From the IMG/VR virus record IMGVR_UViG_3300023202_000383, positions 62,001 to 126,000 of that record: DNA of 64,000 nucleotides; one strand, 5' to 3'. The translations under genes were made by a program, and so were the position numbers. Below, in pieces: positions 438 through 8,710 of the stretch. The notes below the pieces were generated by a model. That model saw only the letters and a list, made by a program, of their open reading frames with translations, was not told where the DNA came from and did no database searches. Numbering within the stretch: the stretch's first letter is position 1; each line of letters opens with the position of its first letter.

Positions 438-1324
438 ATGAGATTGGGCTATTTATATTCTGTGACTCTCATGGAAGCCGACCTCATGGTCGGATTTGGT
501 CCACAAATCCAAAAAACATCCAAAGAACTAGGATTGCTCCAGAAGAGTTAGCTGGGTTTATTCAATCAATAAAAGATGAAACAAAAGTATATATCCCATG
601 GCTTATCAAACAGATTTCTCCATCAAAAGCGGGCAGTCAAAGATTGCGTCTTCCAGAAGACATACCAAGAATAATCAATGTCTTGCGGTCATTTAATAAA
701 TTAAAGACCAAACTGCCACATAAAGACATCAATAAATACACTTTTAGAGATTTAGAAGCGCAAGTAGATAAATTGAGCGGTACCGCTATAAAATCTAAAC
801 GCCAAAAAGCGAAAGATATAAAAGCTGAAGGAGTAGAGGATTACAGGGAAAATGCTTCATGGAAGATAATTAAAGTGACTACCGCTAAAGCAGCTTGTAT
901 TTTGTCTAAGAACACTAAGTGGTGCACAAGCGATGAAGGTGTAGCGGCAGGATATCTCCCGCTATATATCGTGTTTAAGAAAAGTGGCAGCAAGTTGATC
1001 AAAGTTGCACAGTATGATGCTGATTTTGATCAGGTTATGGATGTAAAAGATAATCCGATAGATCAAGTACCAAAATCATTGGCTGAATTGATGAAACCTC
1101 AATCGCCTAGTCCTGAACAAGCATATCGCTATGCTAAAGATGTCATCAAGGGAAGATGGCCCGATGGAGAAGAAACGATAAAGAAAGATCCTAAATGGGC
1201 TTATCACTATGCTCTCGATGTCATCAAGGGAAGATGGCCTGAGGCTGAGGAAACGATAAAGAATGATCCTGAATGGGCTTATCACTATGCTCTCGATGTC
1301 ATCAAGGGAAGATGGCCTGAGTGA
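438..1324 (+). CDS. Phage protein with KWCTS motif and C-terminal 26-aa AYxYAxDVIKGRWP repeats; apparent frameshift near 530
   Basis: ORF 644..1324 stays open back to 437 with no ATG; the ATG 438 ORF in another frame joins plausibly at KELG/IAPEELAG; three C-terminal repeats. Confidence 0.55.
1111..1321 (+). repeat. 78-bp tandem coding repeat, about 2.7 copies
   Basis: TGTCATCAAGGGAAGATGGCC occurs at 1141, 1219 and 1297; copies 2 and 3 are near-identical. Confidence 0.9.
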
Positions 1325-1348: not shown

Positions 1349-3016
1349 TTACTTACTCCAGATAAATTTGAAATGGCCAGCGTCCCATAATCTGCGATAT
1401 CTATTATTGAACATATTTTCAGATTCAGTAAGAGACGGATCGAAATTATCTAATTTGTCCAATAATTTATGTTTTTGAAATTGATGTCTATTAAAGACCA
1501 TATTGTCTTTGACATAACAATATCCAGGCTGTGTTATTGAATCAAGTTTGAATCCCAGTGCTTTATATAAATTTCCAGCAGAGAATCTTCTGTCGCAGTA
1601 TGTCATTATTGTTTTTGGGCCATGCGATCTGGTAAAATGTCTAAGCAATTTACTTGCGCCGCCAATAACGTTGTTGTTTATTTTGTTGGCAAATCTTGAT
1701 ACTTCCCATTCGTATTTTTTGTGTTTGTTGAATCCCATACAACAAACGATTTCATTATCATATGTAAGAGCATATTTAACCCTTGAATTTATATGTCCTT
1801 GCATATGGTTGGTGCTCATAAAATCACTGAAGTTGTTATTGTCGAGTTCTACAATGTCACATTTTCTGGCATATATCTTGTTACTCAACCCCATCTTGTT
1901 TTTTATTATCGACTTGATTATGTCAGTTTTGTCTTTCCATTCGTTCTCATAGATTTGATATACTAGATAGTTATTGCTAAGAGCTAGATCCGCTTTATAA
2001 TAATGTCTATATTTTTCATCTTTAGTCTCTTTTTTGTTAAATGAATGCCAATATATTCCATGCATTTCTATTCCAAAGTCACCGGCATTACAGTCTACTT
2101 CATATGGGCTAATTATTGTTCTATCATTTATTATTACTTCACGATATTGTTCAATGAATTCAATAATTTCTCTCTGTGGATTTGTCATGTTGGCAGAACA
2201 TTTAGAGCATCCGCCTTTAGAAACCATCAATCTATTTGGAGTTGTTCTAAATTCACCATGTAATTTGCATTTTATAATTATTTCATTTTTATCGCCAATG
2301 TATTCAGACAATACTTTATAATGATCTTTATATATTTCTCGTATTTGGTCTACGAATTTATTATGGTTCTTTTTCTTAGCTTCATTTGCACAATCAACAC
2401 AACCATGTCCGCGTAAGTGATTTTCAGCTATTTGCTTGAATTCACCGTGGGTCGGACATTTTATTTTAATTATTGATTTTCTTCCGTTCTTTAATATAAC
2501 ACTGTTATAATCGTATTTGTCACTATGGATTCTACGTGCCTTTTCGATGAATTTATCAGTGGTCAACATCAATTTTGCATTGCCGCATTTTGAGCATCCT
2601 TTGCCTTTTAAATGATTGGCTGGTCTTTGTCTAAAGGTATAATTGTGTTCCTTGCATTTTATTATTGCGAATACACCACTTACTGTCTTTTTATTTGTGT
2701 ATCCAAGATATTCGTATTTATCGCCGTGTATTTTCTTCGAATCGGCAACAAAACTATCGAAGTTTCTTCTGAGCGAATTAATAATTTTATGGCCCGATTT
2801 TTCATATATTAGACGATTTCTCTTTTTATAATCTATATACTGCATTCCTTCTTTTGATGATCTGGTTTGTATATTGTGTTTTTTGAGTTTTAATGATACT
2901 AATTTTCCAGACCTGCCCACTGATTTTCCGATTTCTGATTGGCTTTTGTGTTGTATTATGTACTGATCATATAGCCAATCATAATCATCTAATTTTTGTG
3001 GATTTAGTTTACTCAT
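1349..3016 (-). CDS. Free-standing Hef-like homing endonuclease (HTH + CxxHG/CxxC zinc modules + Vsr/DUF559-type nuclease + GNAT-like C-terminal domain)
   Basis: Repeated HxDKYDY..IKCPxHGEF..HLxGxGCxxC modules; EVD..GIEMHGIYWHS nuclease motif; C-terminal IYARKC..EVSRFA..GGASKL..TYCDRR..RRLWDAG; AT-rich. Confidence 0.8.
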   Translation of the reverse strand: MSKLNPQKLDDYDWLYDQYIIQHKSQSEIGKSVGRSGKLVSLKLKKHNIQTRSSKEGMQYIDYKKRNRLIYEKSGHKIINSLRRNFDSFVADSKKIHGDKYEYLGYTNKKTVSGVFAIIKCKEHNYTFRQRPANHLKGKGCSKCGNAKLMLTTDKFIEKARRIHSDKYDYNSVILKNGRKSIIKIKCPTHGEFKQIAENHLRGHGCVDCANEAKKKNHNKFVDQIREIYKDHYKVLSEYIGDKNEIIIKCKLHGEFRTTPNRLMVSKGGCSKCSANMTNPQREIIEFIEQYREVIINDRTIISPYEVDCNAGDFGIEMHGIYWHSFNKKETKDEKYRHYYKADLALSNNYLVYQIYENEWKDKTDIIKSIIKNKMGLSNKIYARKCDIVELDNNNFSDFMSTNHMQGHINSRVKYALTYDNEIVCCMGFNKHKKYEWEVSRFANKINNNVIGGASKLLRHFTRSHGPKTIMTYCDRRFSAGNLYKALGFKLDSITQPGYCYVKDNMVFNRHQFQKHKLLDKLDNFDPSLTESENMFNNRYRRLWDAGHFKFIWSK

Positions 3017-3137
3017 ATGTTATATTTGCCTCAGTATCAAATACTTTATTAATTATGGATTGTGTCGATCTTTAGACTCCGTGTGTTATGATAGTAAATT
3101 ATTCAAAAATATTATAGTAAGTATAGGAGAAATTATT

Positions 3138-3851
3138 ATGGCTATAATGGGACCATCCGAATTACCCTCTATTCTTAAAGTTAAGTCGGAAGAGCTTAAG
3201 AAGTATGTTCTGTCCAGGCTTGGCTTCCCGACTGTCGAGATAGAAATTGAAGAATCGCAGTTTGAATCAGTTCTAAGGACGACTGGTGATTGGATAGCTC
3301 ATTATTTTCCTAAAGAGCAGAAGCTCGCGTTCTTCAACACGGTTCCTCTGCAAGGCACTTATCCATTGCCAACTGATGCGTATTGGGTTCAAGAGGCAGC
3401 GTGGGATCCAGCAACAACTAGAATTGGTGATGTATTTGGTGCTGAATCATTCCTGTTTTGCTACAGCGGTGATTCCAACATAGTTAGAGAAGATGGAAAG
3501 CTTGTAAATATTAAAGAATGGGATGACTCATATAAGGCTCTTACCCCATATGGCCCGCGTAGGCTAGTCATAGAAGAACACCTTGAGTCACAGAGATTGG
3601 TATCTATTGAGTATGAAGGCGGTTCAATAGAATGCACACCAAACCACCCACTTAAAACGGACGGTATAAGTAACATGATAAATGGATGGGAATGTGCTGA
3701 GGATTGCAAATCTGTTACTTTAAACAATGGTAAGATTGTCCCCGTTATTGGTATTGCTGACATAGAACCTGGGCCAACATATACAGTTCATGCTATTGGC
3801 GCACATTGCTTATTTATATGCAAAGATGGTGAGTCAGTAGTAGGTCATTGA
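3138..3851 (+). CDS. Neck/head-tail adaptor (T4 gp13-like), N-terminal fragment (107 aa) fused to a C-terminal Hint domain
   Basis: GGAGA RBS before ATG 3138; ELKKYVLSRLGFPTVEIEI is typical of gp13-like N-termini; the sequence switches to Hint after GAESFLF. Confidence 0.8.
   Translation: MAIMGPSELPSILKVKSEELKKYVLSRLGFPTVEIEIEESQFESVLRTTGDWIAHYFPKEQKLAFFNTVPLQGTYPLPTDAYWVQEAAWDPATTRIGDVFGAESFLFCYSGDSNIVREDGKLVNIKEWDDSYKALTPYGPRRLVIEEHLESQRLVSIEYEGGSIECTPNHPLKTDGISNMINGWECAEDCKSVTLNNGKIVPVIGIADIEPGPTYTVHAIGAHCLFICKDGESVVGH
3459..3848 (+). mobile_element. Hint (intein-like) domain, 130 aa, ending at His with no terminal Asn or C-extein
   Basis: Block A CYSGDSNIV, block B SIECTPNHPL, block F-like PTYTVHA, block G-like VVGH, then two in-frame TGA stops. 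Confidence 0.8.
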
Positions 3852-3949
3852 TGAAACTCAGAACGTTATATGAATCTATTGATTCCATCGATTTGGATTT
3901 GCGCAATTTGTTAGATATCGCTGGGATCCGTGGTAAACAAAGATTGTGA
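3851..3949 (+). CDS. 32-aa micro-ORF MKLRTLYES...
   Basis: ATG overlaps the upstream stop (TGATG); the N-terminus resembles that of the next ORF. Confidence 0.4.
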   Translation: MKLRTLYESIDSIDLDLRNLLDIAGIRGKQRL

Positions 3950-3969
3950 GCCGATAATCGGACATTAAA

Positions 3970-4209
3970 ATGAAATTGAAGAATTTACATGAATCTGGTG
4001 ATTCTTTGATCCTTTTAAAGGACAAAGTTGAACGCATGAGATCAAGCACATTACACAAGATTGAGCAAGAAATAGAATTATTAGAAATCGGGTTACATGC
4101 ATTAAATAAAAATAAGCCGCATGTAACGGTAGATCATATGGAAAGATCTATTGATGCACTCAAAAAGCTTGCGGGATATCTAAACACATGGTGGGATACT
4201 AATTTATAA
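3970..4209 (+). CDS. Small helical hypothetical protein (MKLKNLHES...)
   Basis: 79-aa ORF in the operon orientation; MKLxxLxE N-terminus. Confidence 0.6.
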   Translation: MKLKNLHESGDSLILLKDKVERMRSSTLHKIEQEIELLEIGLHALNKNKPHVTVDHMERSIDALKKLAGYLNTWWDTNL

Positions 4210-4251
4210 TCAAAATATGATTGCCAATCATATTGCGGGCAAATATGATGT

Positions 4252-5262
4252 ATGAAACCAGCCAATTTTGTTGATATAGATATTAAAAAACTCAAAAAGT
4301 TCTTTCGGACCCATACATTAGGCCAATGTGCGAAAGAATTCGGCTGCTCCAGTGCAACAATAAAGCGTAAACTGAAAGCAGCCGGTGTTGATACTTCTAT
4401 CCACAACAATAGCAGATTAGCTAAAGACTTATTCAAGAAATCCAAAAAAGATACATCATTTCTGACCGAGAATTTTTTGTATGATCAATATATAATCCAG
4501 AATAAAGATTCTAAGACAATAGCTGAAGAAAACAAGTTACATTATAATACTGTGCGCAATAGGATACAGAAATATGGTTTAAAGAAATCAGCAAAAAATG
4601 TGTCAGCATCTATGATGGTTAGGCATTATGAAAAAACTGGATATATGCATCCAGGTCAGAGACCAGATGTAATAAATAAGATCAATAAAAGAAGATCAAG
4701 ATATTATTATAAACCAGCTAAATCTAGTAAAAATTGTTTATTTAAATCGCTGCATGAATTATGTTACGCATTACTTTTAGACAATGATGACGATGTTGAA
4801 TCGTGGGATTATGAATTAATAAAGATCCCATATATTGATAGATTGACTGGCAGGCACAGGATGTATTATGTCGATTTCTCCGTTCAGGCTAAATCGGGCG
4901 ATAGATGGGTTGAGGTTAAGCCAGCTGAGAATATGATTCCGCACGACAAATATTTATATGCGTCCCAAGCCGCAAAACAAGCTGGGATTATGTTTAGGGG
5001 GCTCATAGGGGATGAAAAAAGTCGGGGATATGAACTATTTAAATCTGGATATATGAAAGATAACATTGAATTTAGGAATATTAAAGATATAAAAAATGAC
5101 AAGAATTATACTCTATGGTTCAAAAATATCAATGAAGTAGGTAAAATAAAACACGACCACTATGTTTACAAAGAAGAGGTTGGGCCGTATGTCAGAGTCA
5201 AGCTTAAAGCAAAAGCCAAGAATAAGTCTGGCACCTCTAACACATATCAATGCTATAACTGA
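4252..5262 (+). CDS. HTH-containing TnsA-N/PD-(D/E)XK free-standing endonuclease
   Basis: Two HTH-like segments; FKSLHE..WDYE..IPY..YYVDF..WVEVKP nuclease motif. Confidence 0.75.
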   Translation: MKPANFVDIDIKKLKKFFRTHTLGQCAKEFGCSSATIKRKLKAAGVDTSIHNNSRLAKDLFKKSKKDTSFLTENFLYDQYIIQNKDSKTIAEENKLHYNTVRNRIQKYGLKKSAKNVSASMMVRHYEKTGYMHPGQRPDVINKINKRRSRYYYKPAKSSKNCLFKSLHELCYALLLDNDDDVESWDYELIKIPYIDRLTGRHRMYYVDFSVQAKSGDRWVEVKPAENMIPHDKYLYASQAAKQAGIMFRGLIGDEKSRGYELFKSGYMKDNIEFRNIKDIKNDKNYTLWFKNINEVGKIKHDHYVYKEEVGPYVRVKLKAKAKNKSGTSNTYQCYN

Positions 5263-5902
5263 CACGAAGACCAGTCAGATATTTCTATCTCACAAAGCGT
5301 TTGTTAGTAAAAAATGTAATGATATTCTAGTCGACGAGCTTGCCCATTTGGTATCTGGAGATGCTAGCCATGGCGAAGAATGGCAGGATTGCTGCAATAA
5401 TTTATATGATTCTGTACCAACACACAATCCAGAATTTGATGGATTAAAAAGAAGATTGGGGATACCAGAATATATCGGGGCGAACATCGGGAATATTACT
5501 GGAATTCAGAATGTATTGACCGATTATCATCTTCTACAGCAGTATAGACGATTTTCCCAGAAAATTTTGGGAACAGAGGGCCATTGGGAAGTGCTCGGAG
5601 ACAATAGAATTAGATTATATCCAACTCCCAGGGGCACATTCCCGGTAGTAGTGTTATATGTGCCCGTGATAACCAGATTCAGGTCACCTCAAGCGAGATT
5701 GCTAGCCATGGATATGCTTGTGGCTGAATCTAAGATAATGCTTGGAAATGCTAGGGCGAAATTTAGTTCAATTCCGTCGCCTGATGGTGGGTCGCTAACT
5801 CTTGATGGTGATACTCTTCGCCAGCAGGGCGAAGAGGAACGCGAGAAAATCGTTGAGAAGGCTAATCTTCTTGCGGAGCCTCTTCCTGTACTAAAATGGT
5901 AA
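5189..5902 (+). CDS. Neck protein (gp13-like) C-terminal fragment preceded by a zincin/SprT-like domain
   Basis: GAGGT RBS before ATG 5189; DELAH..SHGEEW motif (5333-5383); from 5483 IRLYPTP..KIMLGNARAKFSSIPSPDGGSLTLDGDTLRQQGEEE matches a gp13-like C-terminus. Confidence 0.75.
   Translation: MSESSLKQKPRISLAPLTHINAITDTKTSQIFLSHKAFVSKKCNDILVDELAHLVSGDASHGEEWQDCCNNLYDSVPTHNPEFDGLKRRLGIPEYIGANIGNITGIQNVLTDYHLLQQYRRFSQKILGTEGHWEVLGDNRIRLYPTPRGTFPVVVLYVPVITRFRSPQARLLAMDMLVAESKIMLGNARAKFSSIPSPDGGSLTLDGDTLRQQGEEEREKIVEKANLLAEPLPVLKW
5863..5900. repeat. 38-bp direct repeat, left copy
   Basis: TAATCTTCTTGCGGAGCCTCTTCCTGTACTAAAATGGT, identical to 7620-7657. Confidence 0.95.
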
Positions 5903-5936
5903 TTATTTTAGCTGAATAATTACTATACTTATAAAA

Positions 5937-7622
5937 ATGAAAGTTGCAGATATAAATGAGCAGGCGTTAGTTGATGATTATAAATCTGGCGCATCTCTCA
6001 GAGATCTTGCCAATAAGTATGGTGCCAGCAGACCAACAATAAAAAAGAGGTTGTTAAAAAATGGTATAGGTATATTGTCATCTACTGACTATATTGCGAA
6101 GTACAATAAGAAGCACAGAGATAAATCTAACAAAAAGAATCGTCAGGGTATTGTGAAAAATCAGGTAGAATATGTAGATATTAATAGAACCACTGGGGAG
6201 TTTGTTGAGCAAGCGGCATCTATTCATAATAGTAGATATGACTATTCGTTAGTAGATTATAAGACTGCTGACGATAAAGTAATTATAATATGTCCTATTC
6301 ATAATAAATTTAGACAAACTCCGCATAGCCATTTAAAAGGCCATGGTTGCCCAAATTGCGGCAGAGAGGCTGGTATTAGCAAGAGATCTATCAAATTTAA
6401 TGAATTTCTTAATAGAGCTGTAGAAAAGCATGGAAATAAATTTAGATATATTGAAGATAGCTATAATGGGCTGAATTGTGATATAACAATCATATGTCAA
6501 GAACACGGGGAATATAATCAGAATGCAAGACAACATTTGTATGGCAGGCAATGCCCTCGATGTGCTGGCGGAGGATATATATCGACAACTAATGAATTCA
6601 TAAGCAAGGCCGTTGAGGTTCATGGCGGCAAATTTGATTATAGCCGCGTTGAATATTCAAACAATAAAACTCCAGTTACAATAGTTTGTCCAGTGCACGG
6701 CGAATTTATGCAGAAGCCGAATGGTCATTTGAATGGCCATGGGTGCTTGATGTGTGCTAGAGATGCGACTTCTTCTGCTGCAGAGTTTGAAATAGTTGAA
6801 TTTCTTAACTCAATTGGCATTAATAGTATTCAACATTCCCGGAGCATCATACCACCCCTTGAATTGGATATTTTTGTTCCTGATTTTAATGTAGCTATAG
6901 AATATAATGGCATATATTGGCATTCATTTGGTAATTTGGAGGAAGAAGATAAATATTCGCATTGCTGCAAATTAGATCGTTGCAAAAAACTTGGAGTCAG
7001 ACTAATCCAGATTTTCGAAAATGAGTGGATATATAAAAAAGATATAGTAAAATCGATGCTAGTGTACTTATTCAATAAAAGTAATAACAAGATTTATGCT
7101 AGAAATTGCGATATTAAAGAGATATCTACATCTCAATATAAAAAATTTACTGATGCTAATCATATGCAAGGATATAGGGCCGCTGCCGCGAGGTATGGTT
7201 TATTTGATGGGGATGAACTTGTTGCTATAGGATCATTTAATAAATATGGTAGTAGAGATTATTGGGAAGTTATCAGATTCGCCAATAAATTGAATCACCA
7301 TGTTGTCGGTGGTTTTTCTAAGATATTGAAACATTTTATAAGAAATGACAAACCTAGTAAAATTGTAACATATGCTGATAGAAGATATTCAGACGGCTCA
7401 TTATATAACAAATGTGGTTTTAAATATATATCGACTACTGATCCAAATTACTATTATGTCAATGGACTAGAAGTGAATAGCCGCCAAAAATTTCAAAAAC
7501 ATAAGCTTAAAGATAAATTGCGCGAGTTTGATAAAAATTTGACGGAAGCGGAAAATATGTTTAATAATGGGTACCGTAGATTATGGGATGCTGGCAATCT
7601 TAAATACCAGTTTCTTATTTAA
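5937..7622 (+). CDS. Hef-like homing endonuclease with GNAT-like C-terminal domain
   Basis: HTH, three HxxxY/FDY..CPxHG..GCPxC modules, ELDIF..AIEYNGIYWHS, and the same C-terminal domain as 1349..3016. Confidence 0.8.
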   Translation: MKVADINEQALVDDYKSGASLRDLANKYGASRPTIKKRLLKNGIGILSSTDYIAKYNKKHRDKSNKKNRQGIVKNQVEYVDINRTTGEFVEQAASIHNSRYDYSLVDYKTADDKVIIICPIHNKFRQTPHSHLKGHGCPNCGREAGISKRSIKFNEFLNRAVEKHGNKFRYIEDSYNGLNCDITIICQEHGEYNQNARQHLYGRQCPRCAGGGYISTTNEFISKAVEVHGGKFDYSRVEYSNNKTPVTIVCPVHGEFMQKPNGHLNGHGCLMCARDATSSAAEFEIVEFLNSIGINSIQHSRSIIPPLELDIFVPDFNVAIEYNGIYWHSFGNLEEEDKYSHCCKLDRCKKLGVRLIQIFENEWIYKKDIVKSMLVYLFNKSNNKIYARNCDIKEISTSQYKKFTDANHMQGYRAAAARYGLFDGDELVAIGSFNKYGSRDYWEVIRFANKLNHHVVGGFSKILKHFIRNDKPSKIVTYADRRYSDGSLYNKCGFKYISTTDPNYYYVNGLEVNSRQKFQKHKLKDKLREFDKNLTEAENMFNNGYRRLWDAGNLKYQFLI

Positions 7623-8182
7623 TCTTCTTGCGGAGCCTCTTCCTGTACTAAAATGGTGACTTGCGACTTTATGGCATCTACGATGTCGCCAATAAGCGTG
7701 CCTTCGTAAGTCTTGCCTGCCTCTATCTTTTTGAGTGTTCTATGATGAGATGTTATGATAGTGCTGTGGTTGGATCTGTTGAGAAGCTTAGTTAGCTCTG
7801 GATAACTGAATCTCAACAGATCCCTTGCGGCGCATATTATAATATCTCTTGTTGTAGTGACTGCTCTTACTCTAGACTTACTAAGAACCTTTCTTTTGTC
7901 AACATTCATTATCTCGCAACCGATTCTAAGCACATCGTCGAATGTTGGTGCACGCGATAGCGTACCGTGGGTTGGTTTACTTGGTCTGTCGGTTTTGATG
8001 ATTGGCTTGCCTTCGGCTTCTTCAGCTCTTTTCCTAGATATAAAATATTCTAGGTTAAATTCAGGTTTTTTCCTTTCCGGCGGCGGCGTTGGCCATCCGT
8101 TTTCAACATCTGATTCATATAGCATCTGCTCTAGCTCTTCTTCGGTATATAATTCTGTTCTGTCCATGTAAACGTTGTTCAT
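7619..8182 (-). CDS. DnaA domain IV (Bac_DnaA_C)-like DNA-binding protein
   Basis: VLSKSRVRAVTTTRDIIICAARDLLRFSYPELTKLLNRSNHSTII parallels the DnaA C-terminal S..R.R.....RQIAMYL.R....S...IG..F.RDHTTV pattern. Confidence 0.65.
   Translation of the reverse strand: MNNVYMDRTELYTEEELEQMLYESDVENGWPTPPPERKKPEFNLEYFISRKRAEEAEGKPIIKTDRPSKPTHGTLSRAPTFDDVLRIGCEIMNVDKRKVLSKSRVRAVTTTRDIIICAARDLLRFSYPELTKLLNRSNHSTIITSHHRTLKKIEAGKTYEGTLIGDIVDAIKSQVTILVQEEAPQED
7620..7657. repeat. 38-bp direct repeat, right copy
   Basis: Identical to 5863-5900; the pair brackets the endonuclease gene. Confidence 0.95.
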
Positions 8183-8221
8183 GTTTTAGCGTCATATAAA
8201 AATTATCAAACATAAATTAGA

Positions 8222-8710
8222 ATGTCTTTTGAAACCATAAAAACCGAGCACCGGATCAACGTAATTAGCGGCAACAAGATACTTGTGCCTGGTTGTGAGC
8301 CGCAATCTACTATAAGCTCAACCACTCTTGCCAAAGAGCAGCAAGAAGATGGGATATGCAATGGGGCATTAGTTGATTTAGATGATGCATTAGATGCCAT
8401 ACCAGGATCTAGAGTCATCCTGGGTATGAATTGGGGGAACTTAGGGACACAGAAATTCTTTGTATTGCCGCCCGTTGATAATTCGTTATGTTGCAGGGGG
8501 TCGATAGCTTTGGAAGATTACTATGCTGTGCTTAGAGGATTGCCGTCTGCAGAGACAGAGCAAGATTTAGAGAATATAGTTGATAATTGCGATAGCTTTA
8601 ACAACTATCAGTGCGATGGATCTATTTTAGAAAGAACATTTGACGATCCAAGAGCATTAAATAGGACTGAATTGCCGCCCGCCAGCCAATCTCGTGGGAG
8701 GTGCATATGA
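8222..8710 (+). CDS. Hypothetical virion-module protein
   Basis: ORF preceded by CAAACATA motif; coupled to the next gene. Confidence 0.6.
   Translation: MSFETIKTEHRINVISGNKILVPGCEPQSTISSTTLAKEQQEDGICNGALVDLDDALDAIPGSRVILGMNWGNLGTQKFFVLPPVDNSLCCRGSIALEDYYAVLRGLPSAETEQDLENIVDNCDSFNNYQCDGSILERTFDDPRALNRTELPPASQSRGRCI

What the first reader, a model, noticed from the sequence alone, without database searches (positions are those of the whole stretch)
3851..5262. Cargo between the neck-gene halves: a TnsA-like nuclease plus two MKLxxLxE micro-genes
Seen: an HTH/PD-(D/E)XK nuclease whose 3' end overlaps the start of the C-half ORF by 74 nt (the RBS lies inside the nuclease gene), and two small ORFs, the first coupled to the Hint stop. 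Established: fractured phage genes with a free-standing homing endonuclease between split-intein parts are known. Inference: Hint, cargo, nuclease and zincin (3459-5482) move as one homing unit whose nuclease cuts intact neck alleles.
Basis: partly seen in the sequence, partly recalled or inferred. Interest (0 to 1): 0.6.

Follow-up and report, generated by a model that had tools for sequence, protein, structure and literature searches.

The report
Hint–zincin element splitting phage neck gene
A selfish DNA element carrying a nuclease gene has cut a giant phage's neck-protein gene in two, and it seems to repair the damage at the protein level with a pairing I found in no paper: an intein-like Hint domain on one half and a tiny zinc protease on the other.

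Summary
Window 3459-5482 is a 2,024-nt insertion between codons Phe107 and Asn108 of a T4 gp13-like neck gene. Sixty related viral loci carry the uninterrupted gene. The insertion encodes three things. First, a full-size BIL/intein-type Hint domain fused to the N-half, which ends in a stop codon where an intein's terminal Asn would be. Second, an HTH + TnsA-like PD-(D/E)xK nuclease. Third, a minigluzincin/SprT-like zinc protease domain fused to the C-half. This is not a split intein: the C-extein's first residue is an invariant Asn and there is no intein C-part. The architecture is a large family (over 100 protein clusters, 15 distinct full loci), always at this site. The cargo varies: inverted or swapped nucleases, extra genes, up to about 5 kb. 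Split and intact alleles are interspersed on the extein tree. Element divergence is uncoupled from extein divergence. Five complete genomes with the intact gene lack the nuclease. So the unit is mobile and the nuclease belongs to it. The two micro-ORFs occur only in this lineage, and nothing shows that they are genes. I favour protease-assisted re-ligation (Hint thioester plus the amine freed by the zincin) over non-covalent reassembly. Neither is shown. I found no published description.

The parts
3138..3458 (+). N-extein of the gp13-like neck gene (107 aa, ends ..GAESFLF)
   Evidence: 61-67% identical to the first 107 aa of the intact alleles L006, L008 and L009. A profile of intact alleles matches T4 gp13 (9mkb) at E 1.2e-3.
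3459..3851 (+). Hint domain (130 aa) fused in frame to the N-extein. It has Cys1 and the block B motif TPNH. It ends ..VVGH and then TGA, at the position of an intein's terminal Asn.
   Evidence: Pfam Vint 25.3 bits, below its cut-off. A profile of 16 homologues matches the BIL domain 2lwy at E 2.2e-5 up to its ..VLVH end, and also several inteins. Position 1 is Cys in 14 and Ser in 2 of 16. T..H is invariant. 14 of 16 end in His followed by a stop.
3851..3949 (+). Micro-ORF 1 (32 aa); its ATG overlaps the Hint stop
   Evidence: Read from the sequence. No relatives. Length compatible with chance. Absent from all other loci.
3970..4209 (+). Micro-ORF 2 (79 aa), predicted helical hairpin
   Evidence: Longer than chance (P 0.005-0.02). 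Codon score at about the 90th percentile of spurious ORFs. No homologue in the genome, in viral contigs or in the Atlas.
4252..5262 (+). HTH-HTH-TnsA-like PD-(D/E)xK nuclease (336 aa), the putative homing endonuclease. Catalytic residues: E169 (4756-4758), D208 (4873-4875), E221 (4912-4914), K223 (4918-4920).
   Evidence: PF08722 at 36.9 bits, above its cut-off. The catalytic residues are invariant in the alignment. 57 relative clusters. dN/dS 0.058 in a close pair.
5174..5179 (+). Shine-Dalgarno-like AAGAGG of the C-half ORF, inside the nuclease gene
   Evidence: Read from the sequence, 9 nt before ATG 5189.
5189..5482 (+). Minigluzincin/SprT-like zinc metallopeptidase domain (98 aa) fused in frame to the C-extein. 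The motif is D49-E50-x-x-H53-x7-H61 (the family has H or D at the first position). The linker ..RRLGIPEYIGA ends at the junction.
   Evidence: Family alignment of 103. Profile versus PDB: selecase E 5.8e-5, proabylysin 5e-4. AF2 pLDDT 90-96. Foldseek 4jiu probability 1.0, TM 0.58. VIA Z 7.0. Atlas: SprT-like.
5483..5902 (+). C-extein of the gp13-like neck gene (139 aa, starts NIGNITGIQ) plus stop
   Evidence: 65-71% identical to the intact alleles. DNA homology between split L026 and intact L006 starts exactly at the Asn codon. Fold and profile matches to T4 gp13.

Best explanation
Window 3459-5482 is a site-specific mobile element of the 'fractured gene' kind, inserted between codons Phe107 and Asn108 of a T4 gp13-like neck gene of a jumbo phage. 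Its middle carries a free-standing HTH + TnsA-like nuclease. I infer that this nuclease is a homing endonuclease that cuts the conserved ..ESFLF|NIGN.. site of intact alleles, so that the element is copied in by repair. The two ends of the element encode the protein-level repair kit. The 5' end adds a BIL/intein-type Hint domain to the N-half. The 3' end adds a minimal zinc protease to the C-half. Proposed chemistry (all inferred): Hint Cys1 makes an N-S acyl shift that turns Phe107 into a thioester. The zincin cuts its own C-terminal linker (..I-G-A|N) and frees the alpha-amine of Asn108. The two halves dock. The amine attacks the thioester and restores the native Phe-Asn peptide bond. Hint and zincin are released. 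This would be trans-splicing in which a protease replaces Asn cyclisation and the +1 nucleophile. Shown: the boundaries, the domain identities, conservation of the catalytic residues, presence/absence polymorphism, variable cargo, and strict linkage of the nuclease to the element. Inferred: nuclease specificity, both cleavages, and ligation. The two micro-ORFs are lineage-specific passengers of unknown status.
For: Exact insertion point and intact alleles. Hint homology to a BIL domain known for ligation without nucleophilic side chains (2lwy; PMC7664689 ref 16). Hint Cys/Ser1 and T..H are conserved in 16 of 16, with the stop placed exactly at the Asn position. The zincin has E 101/103, H 103/103 and H 103/103, and a conserved linker ending in small residues before an invariant Asn. 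Homology to self-inhibited minimal metallopeptidases. Logic: a stop codon after Phe107 would give the same N-fragment as Hint hydrolysis. So a conserved catalytic Hint is needed only if the acyl group is to be transferred, or if the Hint serves as a removable docking handle. Mobility: 8 state changes on the extein tree, at least 4 of them forced. Exteins 90% identical carry Hints only 29% identical. Nuclease is element-borne. Purifying selection on the nuclease. The halves are predicted to bind, with weak support only: ipSAE 0.45 against a best control of 0.11. That mark was reached by 58 of 80 solved complexes and 2 of 110 mismatched pairs, but at 0.60 or under by only 7 of the 80 and by both mismatches. 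The runs agree in at least 75% of contacts and the partner's pLDDT is at least 67.
Against: No biochemical evidence exists for any step. BIL domains mostly cleave rather than splice (PMC7664689). Thioester aminolysis between two proteins is slow unless they are held tightly, and I obtained no interface geometry. Other phage genes split by endonuclease genes work without ligation (PMC3045599). The window's zincin has Asp in place of the first zinc-binding His (27% of the family), so its activity is less certain. No empty-site allele was seen in the three runs that hold the phage, but contigs drop rare variants. TnsA-like nucleases are not an established homing endonuclease family.
Confidence: 0.45

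Rival explanations
1. Same mobile element, but no ligation. Hint and zincin act as removable docking or solubility handles. The Hint thioester is hydrolysed and the zincin cuts itself off. The 107-aa and 139-aa fragments, now with native termini, assemble non-covalently into a working neck protein.
For: BIL domains give mainly N- and C-cleavage products (PMC7664689). Phage genes split by endonuclease genes can function as non-covalent assemblies (Aeh1 NrdA, PMC3045599). The C-fragment needs a protease to gain a native Asn N-terminus. In L039 the C-half lies at least 2.8 kb from any N-half, so the products must work in trans in any case.
Against: A stop codon after Phe107 would make the Hint unnecessary, yet all 16 loci keep it with its catalytic residues. 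The site lies in the invariant motif ..ESFLFNIGN.., where a permanent nick may be costly.
Confidence: 0.35
2. The extra domains are not removed. The neck protein works as a two-chain complex that permanently carries a Hint and a zincin, or these domains have another role, such as a virion-borne protease.
For: No cleavage has been shown. SprT-like peptidases occur as free proteins in jumbo phages (PMC7824862; Atlas row 3).
Against: The in-frame fusion sits exactly at the extein boundary in more than 100 alleles. Catalytic residues are conserved on both sides, as is the linker before the junction. Intact alleles manage without either domain.
Confidence: 0.07
3. The nuclease is not a homing endonuclease. 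It is a domesticated gp4-type head-completion nuclease that happens to lie within the neck gene.
For: Its catalytic domain matches phrog_218 'head closure' (E 3.4e-15). T4 gp4 is a TnsA-like nuclease (PMC7824862). It is the only such nuclease in G000 and in the complete genome G001. It evolves as slowly as the exteins.
Against: Five 98-100% complete genomes with an intact gp13 have no phrog_218 match and no homologue of it. In L036 another endonuclease gene replaces it, in L034 it has decayed, and in L044/L050 it is inverted.
Confidence: 0.05
4. A canonical split intein trans-splices the two halves, as in the published fractured genes.
For: The gene order is the same: extein half with Hint, endonuclease gene, second extein half (PMC2677866).
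Against: The Hint is full size and lacks the terminal Asn. The downstream ORF starts with a metallopeptidase, not an intein C-part. The +1 residue is Asn in 103 of 103.
Confidence: 0.02

Closest known systems
Fractured genes: split inteins with a free-standing homing endonuclease gene between the halves (Dassa et al. 2009, PMC2677866)
   Same: A phage gene is broken into two ORFs at a conserved site. An endonuclease gene lies between them, and Hint-family sequence is fused to the upstream half. Frames sometimes overlap. The endonuclease types vary.
   Different: Here the Hint is not split: the whole domain sits on the N-half and stops before the terminal Asn. The C-half carries a zinc protease instead of an intein C-part. 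The +1 residue is Asn. The endonuclease is TnsA-like rather than GIY-YIG or Vsr-like. The host gene (gp13 neck) is structural and is not among those reported.
A-type bacterial intein-like (BIL) domains, e.g. PDB 2lwy (Aranko, Oeemig, Iwai 2013, as cited in PMC7664689 and PMC4031507; Dassa et al. 2004)
   Same: Best solved match of the Hint profile (E 2.2e-5). N-terminal Cys, block B T..H and a penultimate His. These domains act without a nucleophilic +1 side chain. From memory: the freed amine of the C-flank attacks the thioester.
   Different: BIL domains keep the terminal Asn and work in cis within one polypeptide of variable bacterial proteins. Here the Asn is replaced by a stop codon, the C-flank is a separate protein, and a protease would have to free its amine.
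Phage genes split by endonuclease genes and assembled without ligation (Aeromonas phage Aeh1 nrdA/mobE, PMC3045599)
   Same: An essential phage gene is split by a mobile endonuclease gene, and function is restored from two polypeptides.
   Different: Those use short interaction segments and have no catalytic processing domains.
Minigluzincins: selecase, proabylysin, projannalysin (PDB 4qhf, 4jiu, 4jix)
   Same: About 100-aa minimal HExxH...H metallopeptidase scaffold. Matched by profile (E 5.8e-5 to 2.3e-3) and by fold. From memory: the zymogens hold their own C-terminal tail in the active-site cleft.
   Different: Those are free-standing archaeal proteins. This domain is fused to the N-terminus of a phage neck fragment, and a quarter of the family has Asp for the first His.
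TnsA of Tn7 and T4 gp4 head-completion nuclease
   Same: The same PD-(D/E)xK catalytic domain (PF08722 above its cut-off; phrog_218), with E...D...ExK conserved.
   Different: No TnsA C-terminal domain, no TnsB partner and no transposon ends. Two N-terminal HTH modules, as in free-standing homing endonucleases. Absent from related complete genomes whose gp13 is intact.
Hedgehog autoprocessing
   Same: A Hint at the C-terminus of a protein makes a (thio)ester that is resolved by an external nucleophile, not by a +1 side chain.
   Different: In Hedgehog the nucleophile is cholesterol. Here it would be water or the amine of a partner protein.

Membership tests
Fractured gene with split intein (Dassa 2009) | Host gene in two ORFs at a point where other alleles are continuous | tested here: met
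   60 intact loci read ..ESFLF|NIGN.. and 15 distinct loci are split at that point.
Fractured gene with split intein (Dassa 2009) | Free-standing endonuclease gene between the halves | tested here: met
   TnsA-like nuclease at 4252-5262. Other loci carry an inverted copy or a different endonuclease gene.
Fractured gene with split intein (Dassa 2009) | Intein split into an N-part and a C-part (the latter ending His-Asn) followed by Cys/Ser/Thr | tested here: not met
   The whole Hint is on the N-half. The C-half starts with a zincin. The +1 residue is Asn in 103 of 103.
Class 1 intein | N-terminal Cys/Ser and block B T-x-x-H | tested here: met
   Cys in 14 and Ser in 2 of 16; T and H invariant.
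Class 1 intein | Terminal Asn and a +1 nucleophile within one reading frame | tested here: not met
   A stop codon follows the penultimate His in 14 of 16. The C-extein starts with Asn.
BIL domain (A-type) | Hint homology closest to BIL | tested here: met
   2lwy is the best PDB match, E 2.2e-5, aligned to its C-terminal ..VLVH.
BIL domain (A-type) | C-terminal His-Asn, acting in cis in variable bacterial proteins | tested here: not met
   No Asn. The host is a conserved phage structural gene, and the C-flank is a separate protein.
TnsA-like PD-(D/E)xK nuclease (PF08722) | Profile match above the curated cut-off, with the catalytic E, D, ExK | tested here: met
   36.9 bits against 26.5. E169, D208, E221 and K223 are invariant.
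Tn7-type transposase TnsA | TnsA C-terminal domain, TnsB partner and transposon context | tested here: not met
   No such matches in the protein or in its neighbours.
Homing endonuclease (functional) | Encoded in an element that is present or absent at one fixed site among related genomes | tested here: met
Homing endonuclease (functional) | Cuts the empty allele and not the occupied one | not testable with these tools
   Needs an in-vitro cleavage assay.
Minigluzincin / SprT-like zincin | HExxH plus a downstream His on a scaffold of about 100 aa | tested here: met
   Family: H/D-E-x-x-H-x7-H with E 101/103 and both His 103/103. The window's copy has Asp at the first position.
Minigluzincin / SprT-like zincin | Homology to solved members | tested here: met
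   Profile: selecase 5.8e-5, proabylysin 5e-4, projannalysin 2.3e-3. Fold: Foldseek probability 1.0 and TM 0.58; VIA Z 7.0, which is middling.
Minigluzincin / SprT-like zincin | Proteolytic activity, here self-cleavage at ..A|N.. | not testable with these tools
   Needs expression and mass spectrometry.
T4 gp13 neck protein | Sequence or fold homology to gp13 and a place in the neck-tail module | tested here: met
   Profile versus 9mkb/9lu4 at E 1.2e-3. PF26809 precomputed. gp15 and sheath genes lie downstream. Foldseek and Atlas matches.

The most novel reading that the evidence does not exclude
A new natural protein-ligation mechanism. It would be two-component trans-splicing in which a Hint domain truncated before its terminal Asn supplies the acyl thioester. 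A dedicated minimal zinc protease on the partner protein replaces Asn cyclisation and exposes an alpha-amine (Asn, not Cys/Ser/Thr). The amine then rebuilds the native peptide bond by aminolysis. This would lift the +1 nucleophile rule that limits where inteins can insert, and it would give a scarless ligation system for any junction.
Probability: 0.4. Interest if true: 0.93.

Novelty: new variant of a known kind. Interest (0 to 1): 0.8.

Why it matters
Inteins and split inteins can live only next to a Cys, Ser or Thr, and they always supply both halves of the Hint fold. This family shows that a selfish element can colonise a site without such a residue. It does so by pairing a complete but Asn-less Hint with a protease on the other fragment. 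If the fragments are re-ligated, this is a new splicing chemistry and a candidate tool for traceless protein ligation. If they are not, it is the first case I know of where a fractured gene is healed by two different self-removing domains. Either way, it adds a TnsA-like nuclease to the candidate homing endonuclease families. It also shows that the element acts as a cargo carrier (methyltransferase-like gene, YunG fusion, up to about 5 kb) inside an essential structural gene of jumbo phages. It is directly testable with two small ORFs.

Tried and rejected
- blastn of 3000-6000 against the phage collection found no match.
- The word-index protein search restricted to the zincin region found only the window's own protein.
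- The exhaustive search with a two-sequence zincin profile gave only 4 hits, all gp13-linked. It undercounted the family, which the whole-protein search showed to be large. So I cannot claim that the zincin is absent from other genes.
- Single-sequence AF2 of the C-protein was useless (pLDDT 41).
- phmmer of the nuclease and of an intact gp13 against PDB found nothing.
- Rfam found no intron or other RNA family in 2800-8300, so RNA splicing is not indicated.
- A hairpin upstream of the nuclease gene, of the kind reported for fractured genes, is not better than shuffles (z -0.07). Promoter and terminator scans are at chance level.
- The micro-ORFs have no paralogue in the genome, no relative in viral contigs and only generic helical look-alikes.
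The Atlas feature search of the zincin gave no usable hit.
- Reads: only contigs were available. They show no joint that skips the element and there is no RNA run, so neither expression nor a co-existing empty allele could be assessed.
- The canonical split-intein reading and the 'core gp4' reading were considered and rejected (see rivals).
Full report
THE OBSERVATION. The window is part of a 256.5-kb viral record. On the + strand there are five ORFs in a row.
- A 237-aa ORF from ATG 3138 to TGA 3849-3851.
- A 32-aa ORF, 3851-3949, whose ATG shares a base with that TGA.
- A 79-aa ORF, 3970-4209.
- A 336-aa ORF, 4252-5262.
- A 237-aa ORF from ATG 5189 to 5902. It is preceded by AAGAGG at 5174-5179 and overlaps the 336-aa ORF by 74 nt.

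The 336-aa protein matches Pfam Tn7_TnsA-like_N above the curated cut-off (36.9 against 26.5 bits). It has two weak helix-turn-helix matches in its first 110 residues. Contigs of three public runs of one study carry 3100-5892 without any difference.

WHAT IS INTERRUPTED. Related viral contigs hold an uninterrupted 246-249-aa gene that reads ..GAESFLF|NIGNI(S/T)GIQ.. (L008, L006, L009). The window's first ORF matches residues 1-107 of these and its last ORF matches residues 108 to the end. Hence 3459-5482 (2,024 nt) is an insertion between two codons. A profile of intact alleles finds T4 neck protein gp13 as the best solved relative (E 1.2e-3). The public collection's precomputed Pfam family is Phage_T4_gp13, and gp15 and sheath genes follow downstream. 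In the pair L026 (split) and L006 (intact), 87% identical in DNA, homology starts exactly at the Asn codon. The site lies in a stretch that is more conserved than the gene average (0.74-0.75 against 0.64 mean pairwise base identity).

THE TWO ENDS OF THE INSERTION.
- Upstream end. The 130 residues after Phe107 start with Cys, contain T-P-N-H and end ..VVGH and then a stop. Pfam alone is marginal (Vint 25.3 bits, cut-off 27). A profile of 16 homologues, however, matches a bacterial intein-like domain (2lwy, E 2.2e-5), aligned to its C-terminal ..VLVH. It also matches the NrdJ-1, VidaL, RadA and gp41-1 inteins. Across the 16 sequences, position 1 is Cys (14) or Ser (2), and the block B Thr and His are invariant. 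Fourteen end in His followed directly by a stop codon. This is a complete Hint domain truncated exactly where an intein has its terminal Asn.
- Downstream end. The 98 residues before Asn108 form a domain that family scans leave open (SprT-like, E 0.013). An alignment of 103 homologues shows (H 75/D 28)-E(101)-x-x-H(103)-x7-H(103). It also shows an invariant Pro and Asp upstream, and a conserved linker ..F-x-x-L-R-K/R-R-L-G-I-P-x-x-I-A-A before an invariant Asn.
- Fold of the downstream end. With that alignment AF2 gives pLDDT 90-96 for the domain. Foldseek ranks the proabylysin zymogen first (E 4.7e-3, probability 1.0, TM 0.58), followed by selecase and projannalysin. VIA-align gives Z 7.0 over 85 residues, a middling value. 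A sequence profile matches selecase (5.8e-5), proabylysin (5e-4) and projannalysin (2.3e-3), with the three zinc ligands aligned. The ESM Atlas look-alikes are SprT-like and YgjP-like. It is a minimal zinc metallopeptidase.
- The window's own copy. It has Asp instead of the first His. This variant makes up 27% of the family, occurs in two clades, and keeps all other invariant residues.

IT IS A FAMILY, ALWAYS AT THIS SITE.
- The nuclease has 57 relative clusters, down to 41% identity.
- All five contexts that I fetched show the order N-half+Hint, nuclease, zincin+C-half.
- The C-protein has 400 relatives. Of the 120 listed, 106-109 carry the zincin extension and 11 are intact genes.
- Among 80 viral loci, 60 are intact and 15 distinct loci are split with both halves present.
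- The two-sequence exhaustive search found the zincin only in this gene. That profile was weak, so absence elsewhere is not established.

THE UNIT IS MOBILE.
- On a tree of 123 C-exteins the intact alleles (14) are interspersed with split ones (109). Eight changes of state are needed, at least four of them forced by well-supported branches (FastTree on about 150 columns, so the detail is soft). L006 (intact) and P0070 (split) are sisters with 96% identical C-exteins.
- Across 105 pairs of split loci, extein identity does not predict Hint identity (Spearman 0.10, p 0.31). L030 and L036 have exteins 90% identical but Hints 29% and zincins 32% identical. L050 and L018 show 88% against 31% and 42%. 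Hint and zincin identities do correlate with each other (0.30, p 0.002).
- Different lineages of the element have therefore entered or replaced each other in near-identical host genes, with both ends travelling together.

THE MIDDLE IS VARIABLE CARGO. The usual insertion is 1,560-1,720 nt: Hint, nuclease and zincin, with at most about 110 nt between the Hint stop and the nuclease start. The variants I saw are these.
- L018 has the nuclease fused to a YunG domain.
- L016/L031 add a 338-aa protein with an NPPY motif and a 251-aa protein on the other strand.
- L044 and L050 have a longer TnsA-like nuclease on the opposite strand, and a Hint that starts with Ser.
- L036 has, instead, a 668-aa endonuclease of the family that also flanks the neck gene in the window.
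- L034 keeps only a decayed nuclease remnant plus two other genes.
- L033 spans about 5 kb.

The window's 400 extra bases with the two micro-ORFs occur in none of the others, and the micro-ORFs have no relatives. Micro-ORF 2 is longer than chance allows (P 0.005-0.02). Its codon usage is only at about the 90th percentile of spurious ORFs. Micro-ORF 1 cannot be told from chance. I treat them as lineage-specific passengers of unproven coding status.

THE NUCLEASE BELONGS TO THE ELEMENT. Its catalytic domain also matches the PHROG of T4-type 'head closure' proteins. T4 gp4 is a TnsA-like nuclease (PMC7824862), and this is the only such nuclease in G000 and in the complete 341-kb genome G001. It could therefore have been a core gene. 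But five 98-100% complete jumbo genomes with an intact gp13 have neither a phrog_218 match nor a homologue of it. The same queries do find it in G000, G001 and G005. It is under purifying selection: dN/dS is 0.058 in a close pair, and E169, D208, E221 and K223 are invariant. Together with its HTH modules, this fits an active homing endonuclease. Cleavage of the empty site remains untested, and I found no paper that treats TnsA-like nucleases as homing enzymes.

HOW THE PROTEIN IS HEALED. Canonical splicing is excluded: there is no terminal Asn, no intein C-part, and the +1 residue is Asn. Rfam finds no intron. Both added domains keep their catalytic residues in every copy, so both probably act.
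- The zincin is the only evident way to give the C-fragment a native Asn N-terminus. Its own linker, which ends in small residues, is the obvious substrate. From memory, the zymogens of its solved relatives hold their own C-terminal tail in the cleft.
- The Hint can make a thioester at Phe107. But hydrolysis of that thioester would yield exactly what a stop codon after Phe107 would yield. So a conserved catalytic Hint makes sense only in two cases: (a) the acyl group is passed on, or (b) the Hint is a docking handle that must later be removed.
- Under (a), the amine of Asn108 freed by the zincin attacks the thioester and restores the Phe-Asn bond. This has a precedent in A-type BIL domains, the closest solved relatives of this Hint. 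These are described as ligating 'without nucleophilic side chains' (Aranko et al. 2013, cited in PMC7664689 and PMC4031507; Dassa et al. 2004). That the attacking group there is the freed amine is my recollection.
- Under (b), the fragments stay nicked, as in Aeh1 NrdA (PMC3045599). BIL domains do mostly cleave (PMC7664689).
- I put (a) at about 0.45 and (b) at about 0.35.
- The complex prediction for the two proteins gave only weak support: 0.45 against a best control of 0.11. The mark was reached by 58 of 80 solved complexes and 2 of 110 mismatches, but at 0.60 or under by only 7 of the 80 and by both mismatches. The runs agree in at least 75% of contacts and the partner's pLDDT is at least 67. 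No interface was given, so it says nothing about (a) against (b).

COMPARISON WITH WHAT IS KNOWN, AND NOVELTY. The gene order is that of the fractured genes of Dassa et al. (PMC2677866). That paper does not mention neck genes, TnsA or metalloproteases, and the defining split intein is absent here. Searches for Hint with zincin or metallopeptidase, for gp13 with intein, and for TnsA-like with homing endonuclease found no description. The library does not cover subscription journals. I class this as a new variant of a known kind. If ligation is confirmed, it would be a new splicing mechanism.

LIMITS. Everything about catalysis is inferred from sequence. The trees rest on short alignments. Most loci are metagenomic fragments. 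The zincin may exist in other genes that my weak first profile missed.

Noticed in passing
window 5863-5900 and 7620-7657; ORF 5937-7622 (+): An exact 38-nt direct repeat of the last bases of the neck gene brackets a 561-aa endonuclease gene. That gene matches phrog_559 'HNH endonuclease' at E 2e-132, has DUF723/treble-clef zinc fingers and a Mom-like C-terminus, and sits right after the gp13 stop. The cassette thus carries its own copy of the gene's 3' end. The assembly graph collapses the repeat to double depth, and the cassette has the same depth as its flanks.
   Followed up: partly
window 1349-3016 (-): A 555-aa paralogue of that endonuclease lies just upstream of the neck gene on the other strand. 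A Mom-like gene holds the same place in L016 and L018, and a 668-aa member sits inside the element in L036.
   Followed up: partly
L054:2158-2547: A canonical cis-splicing mini-intein (130 aa, Cys1 ... His-Asn, +1 Ser) interrupts the same neck gene four codons upstream (..GAE|C...HN|SFLFNIGN..). It is only distantly related to the element's Hint (hhalign probability 71%, 17% identity). Two different protein-level elements therefore target almost the same spot.
   Followed up: yes
L025:1069-2343: In the genome with the intact L008 allele there is another apparent fractured gene. An ORF ends in a DnaE-like ..GITPVDP.. motif followed by a Cys-initiated extension. Next to it, on the other strand, lies a 307-aa DUF7487 + weak TnsA-like nuclease.
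   Followed up: no
L016:5071-6804 (= L031): Extra cargo inside the element: a 338-aa protein with an N-P-P-Y motif (suggestive of an adenine methyltransferase) and a convergent 251-aa protein. Neither has a Pfam match. This could be a restriction-modification-like pair riding in the element.
   Followed up: no
L039:2781-3464, L037: A zincin+C-half ORF with no N-half anywhere in the 26.8-kb contig. Collagen-like tail-fibre-type genes and a 204-aa protein lie directly upstream. So the two halves can be far apart, or separated by ordinary phage genes.
   Followed up: partly
window 7619-8182 (-): A 187-aa protein with a DnaA C-terminal helix-turn-helix domain (E 7e-11) lies between the endonuclease cassette and the next structural gene. 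Relatives have no gene at this place.
   Followed up: no
window 644-1324 (+): A 226-aa ORF ends in three tandem copies of a unit of about 26 aa (..KGRWP-E-EETIK-DP-WAYHYALDVI..). Its only match is an uncharacterised PHROG.
   Followed up: no
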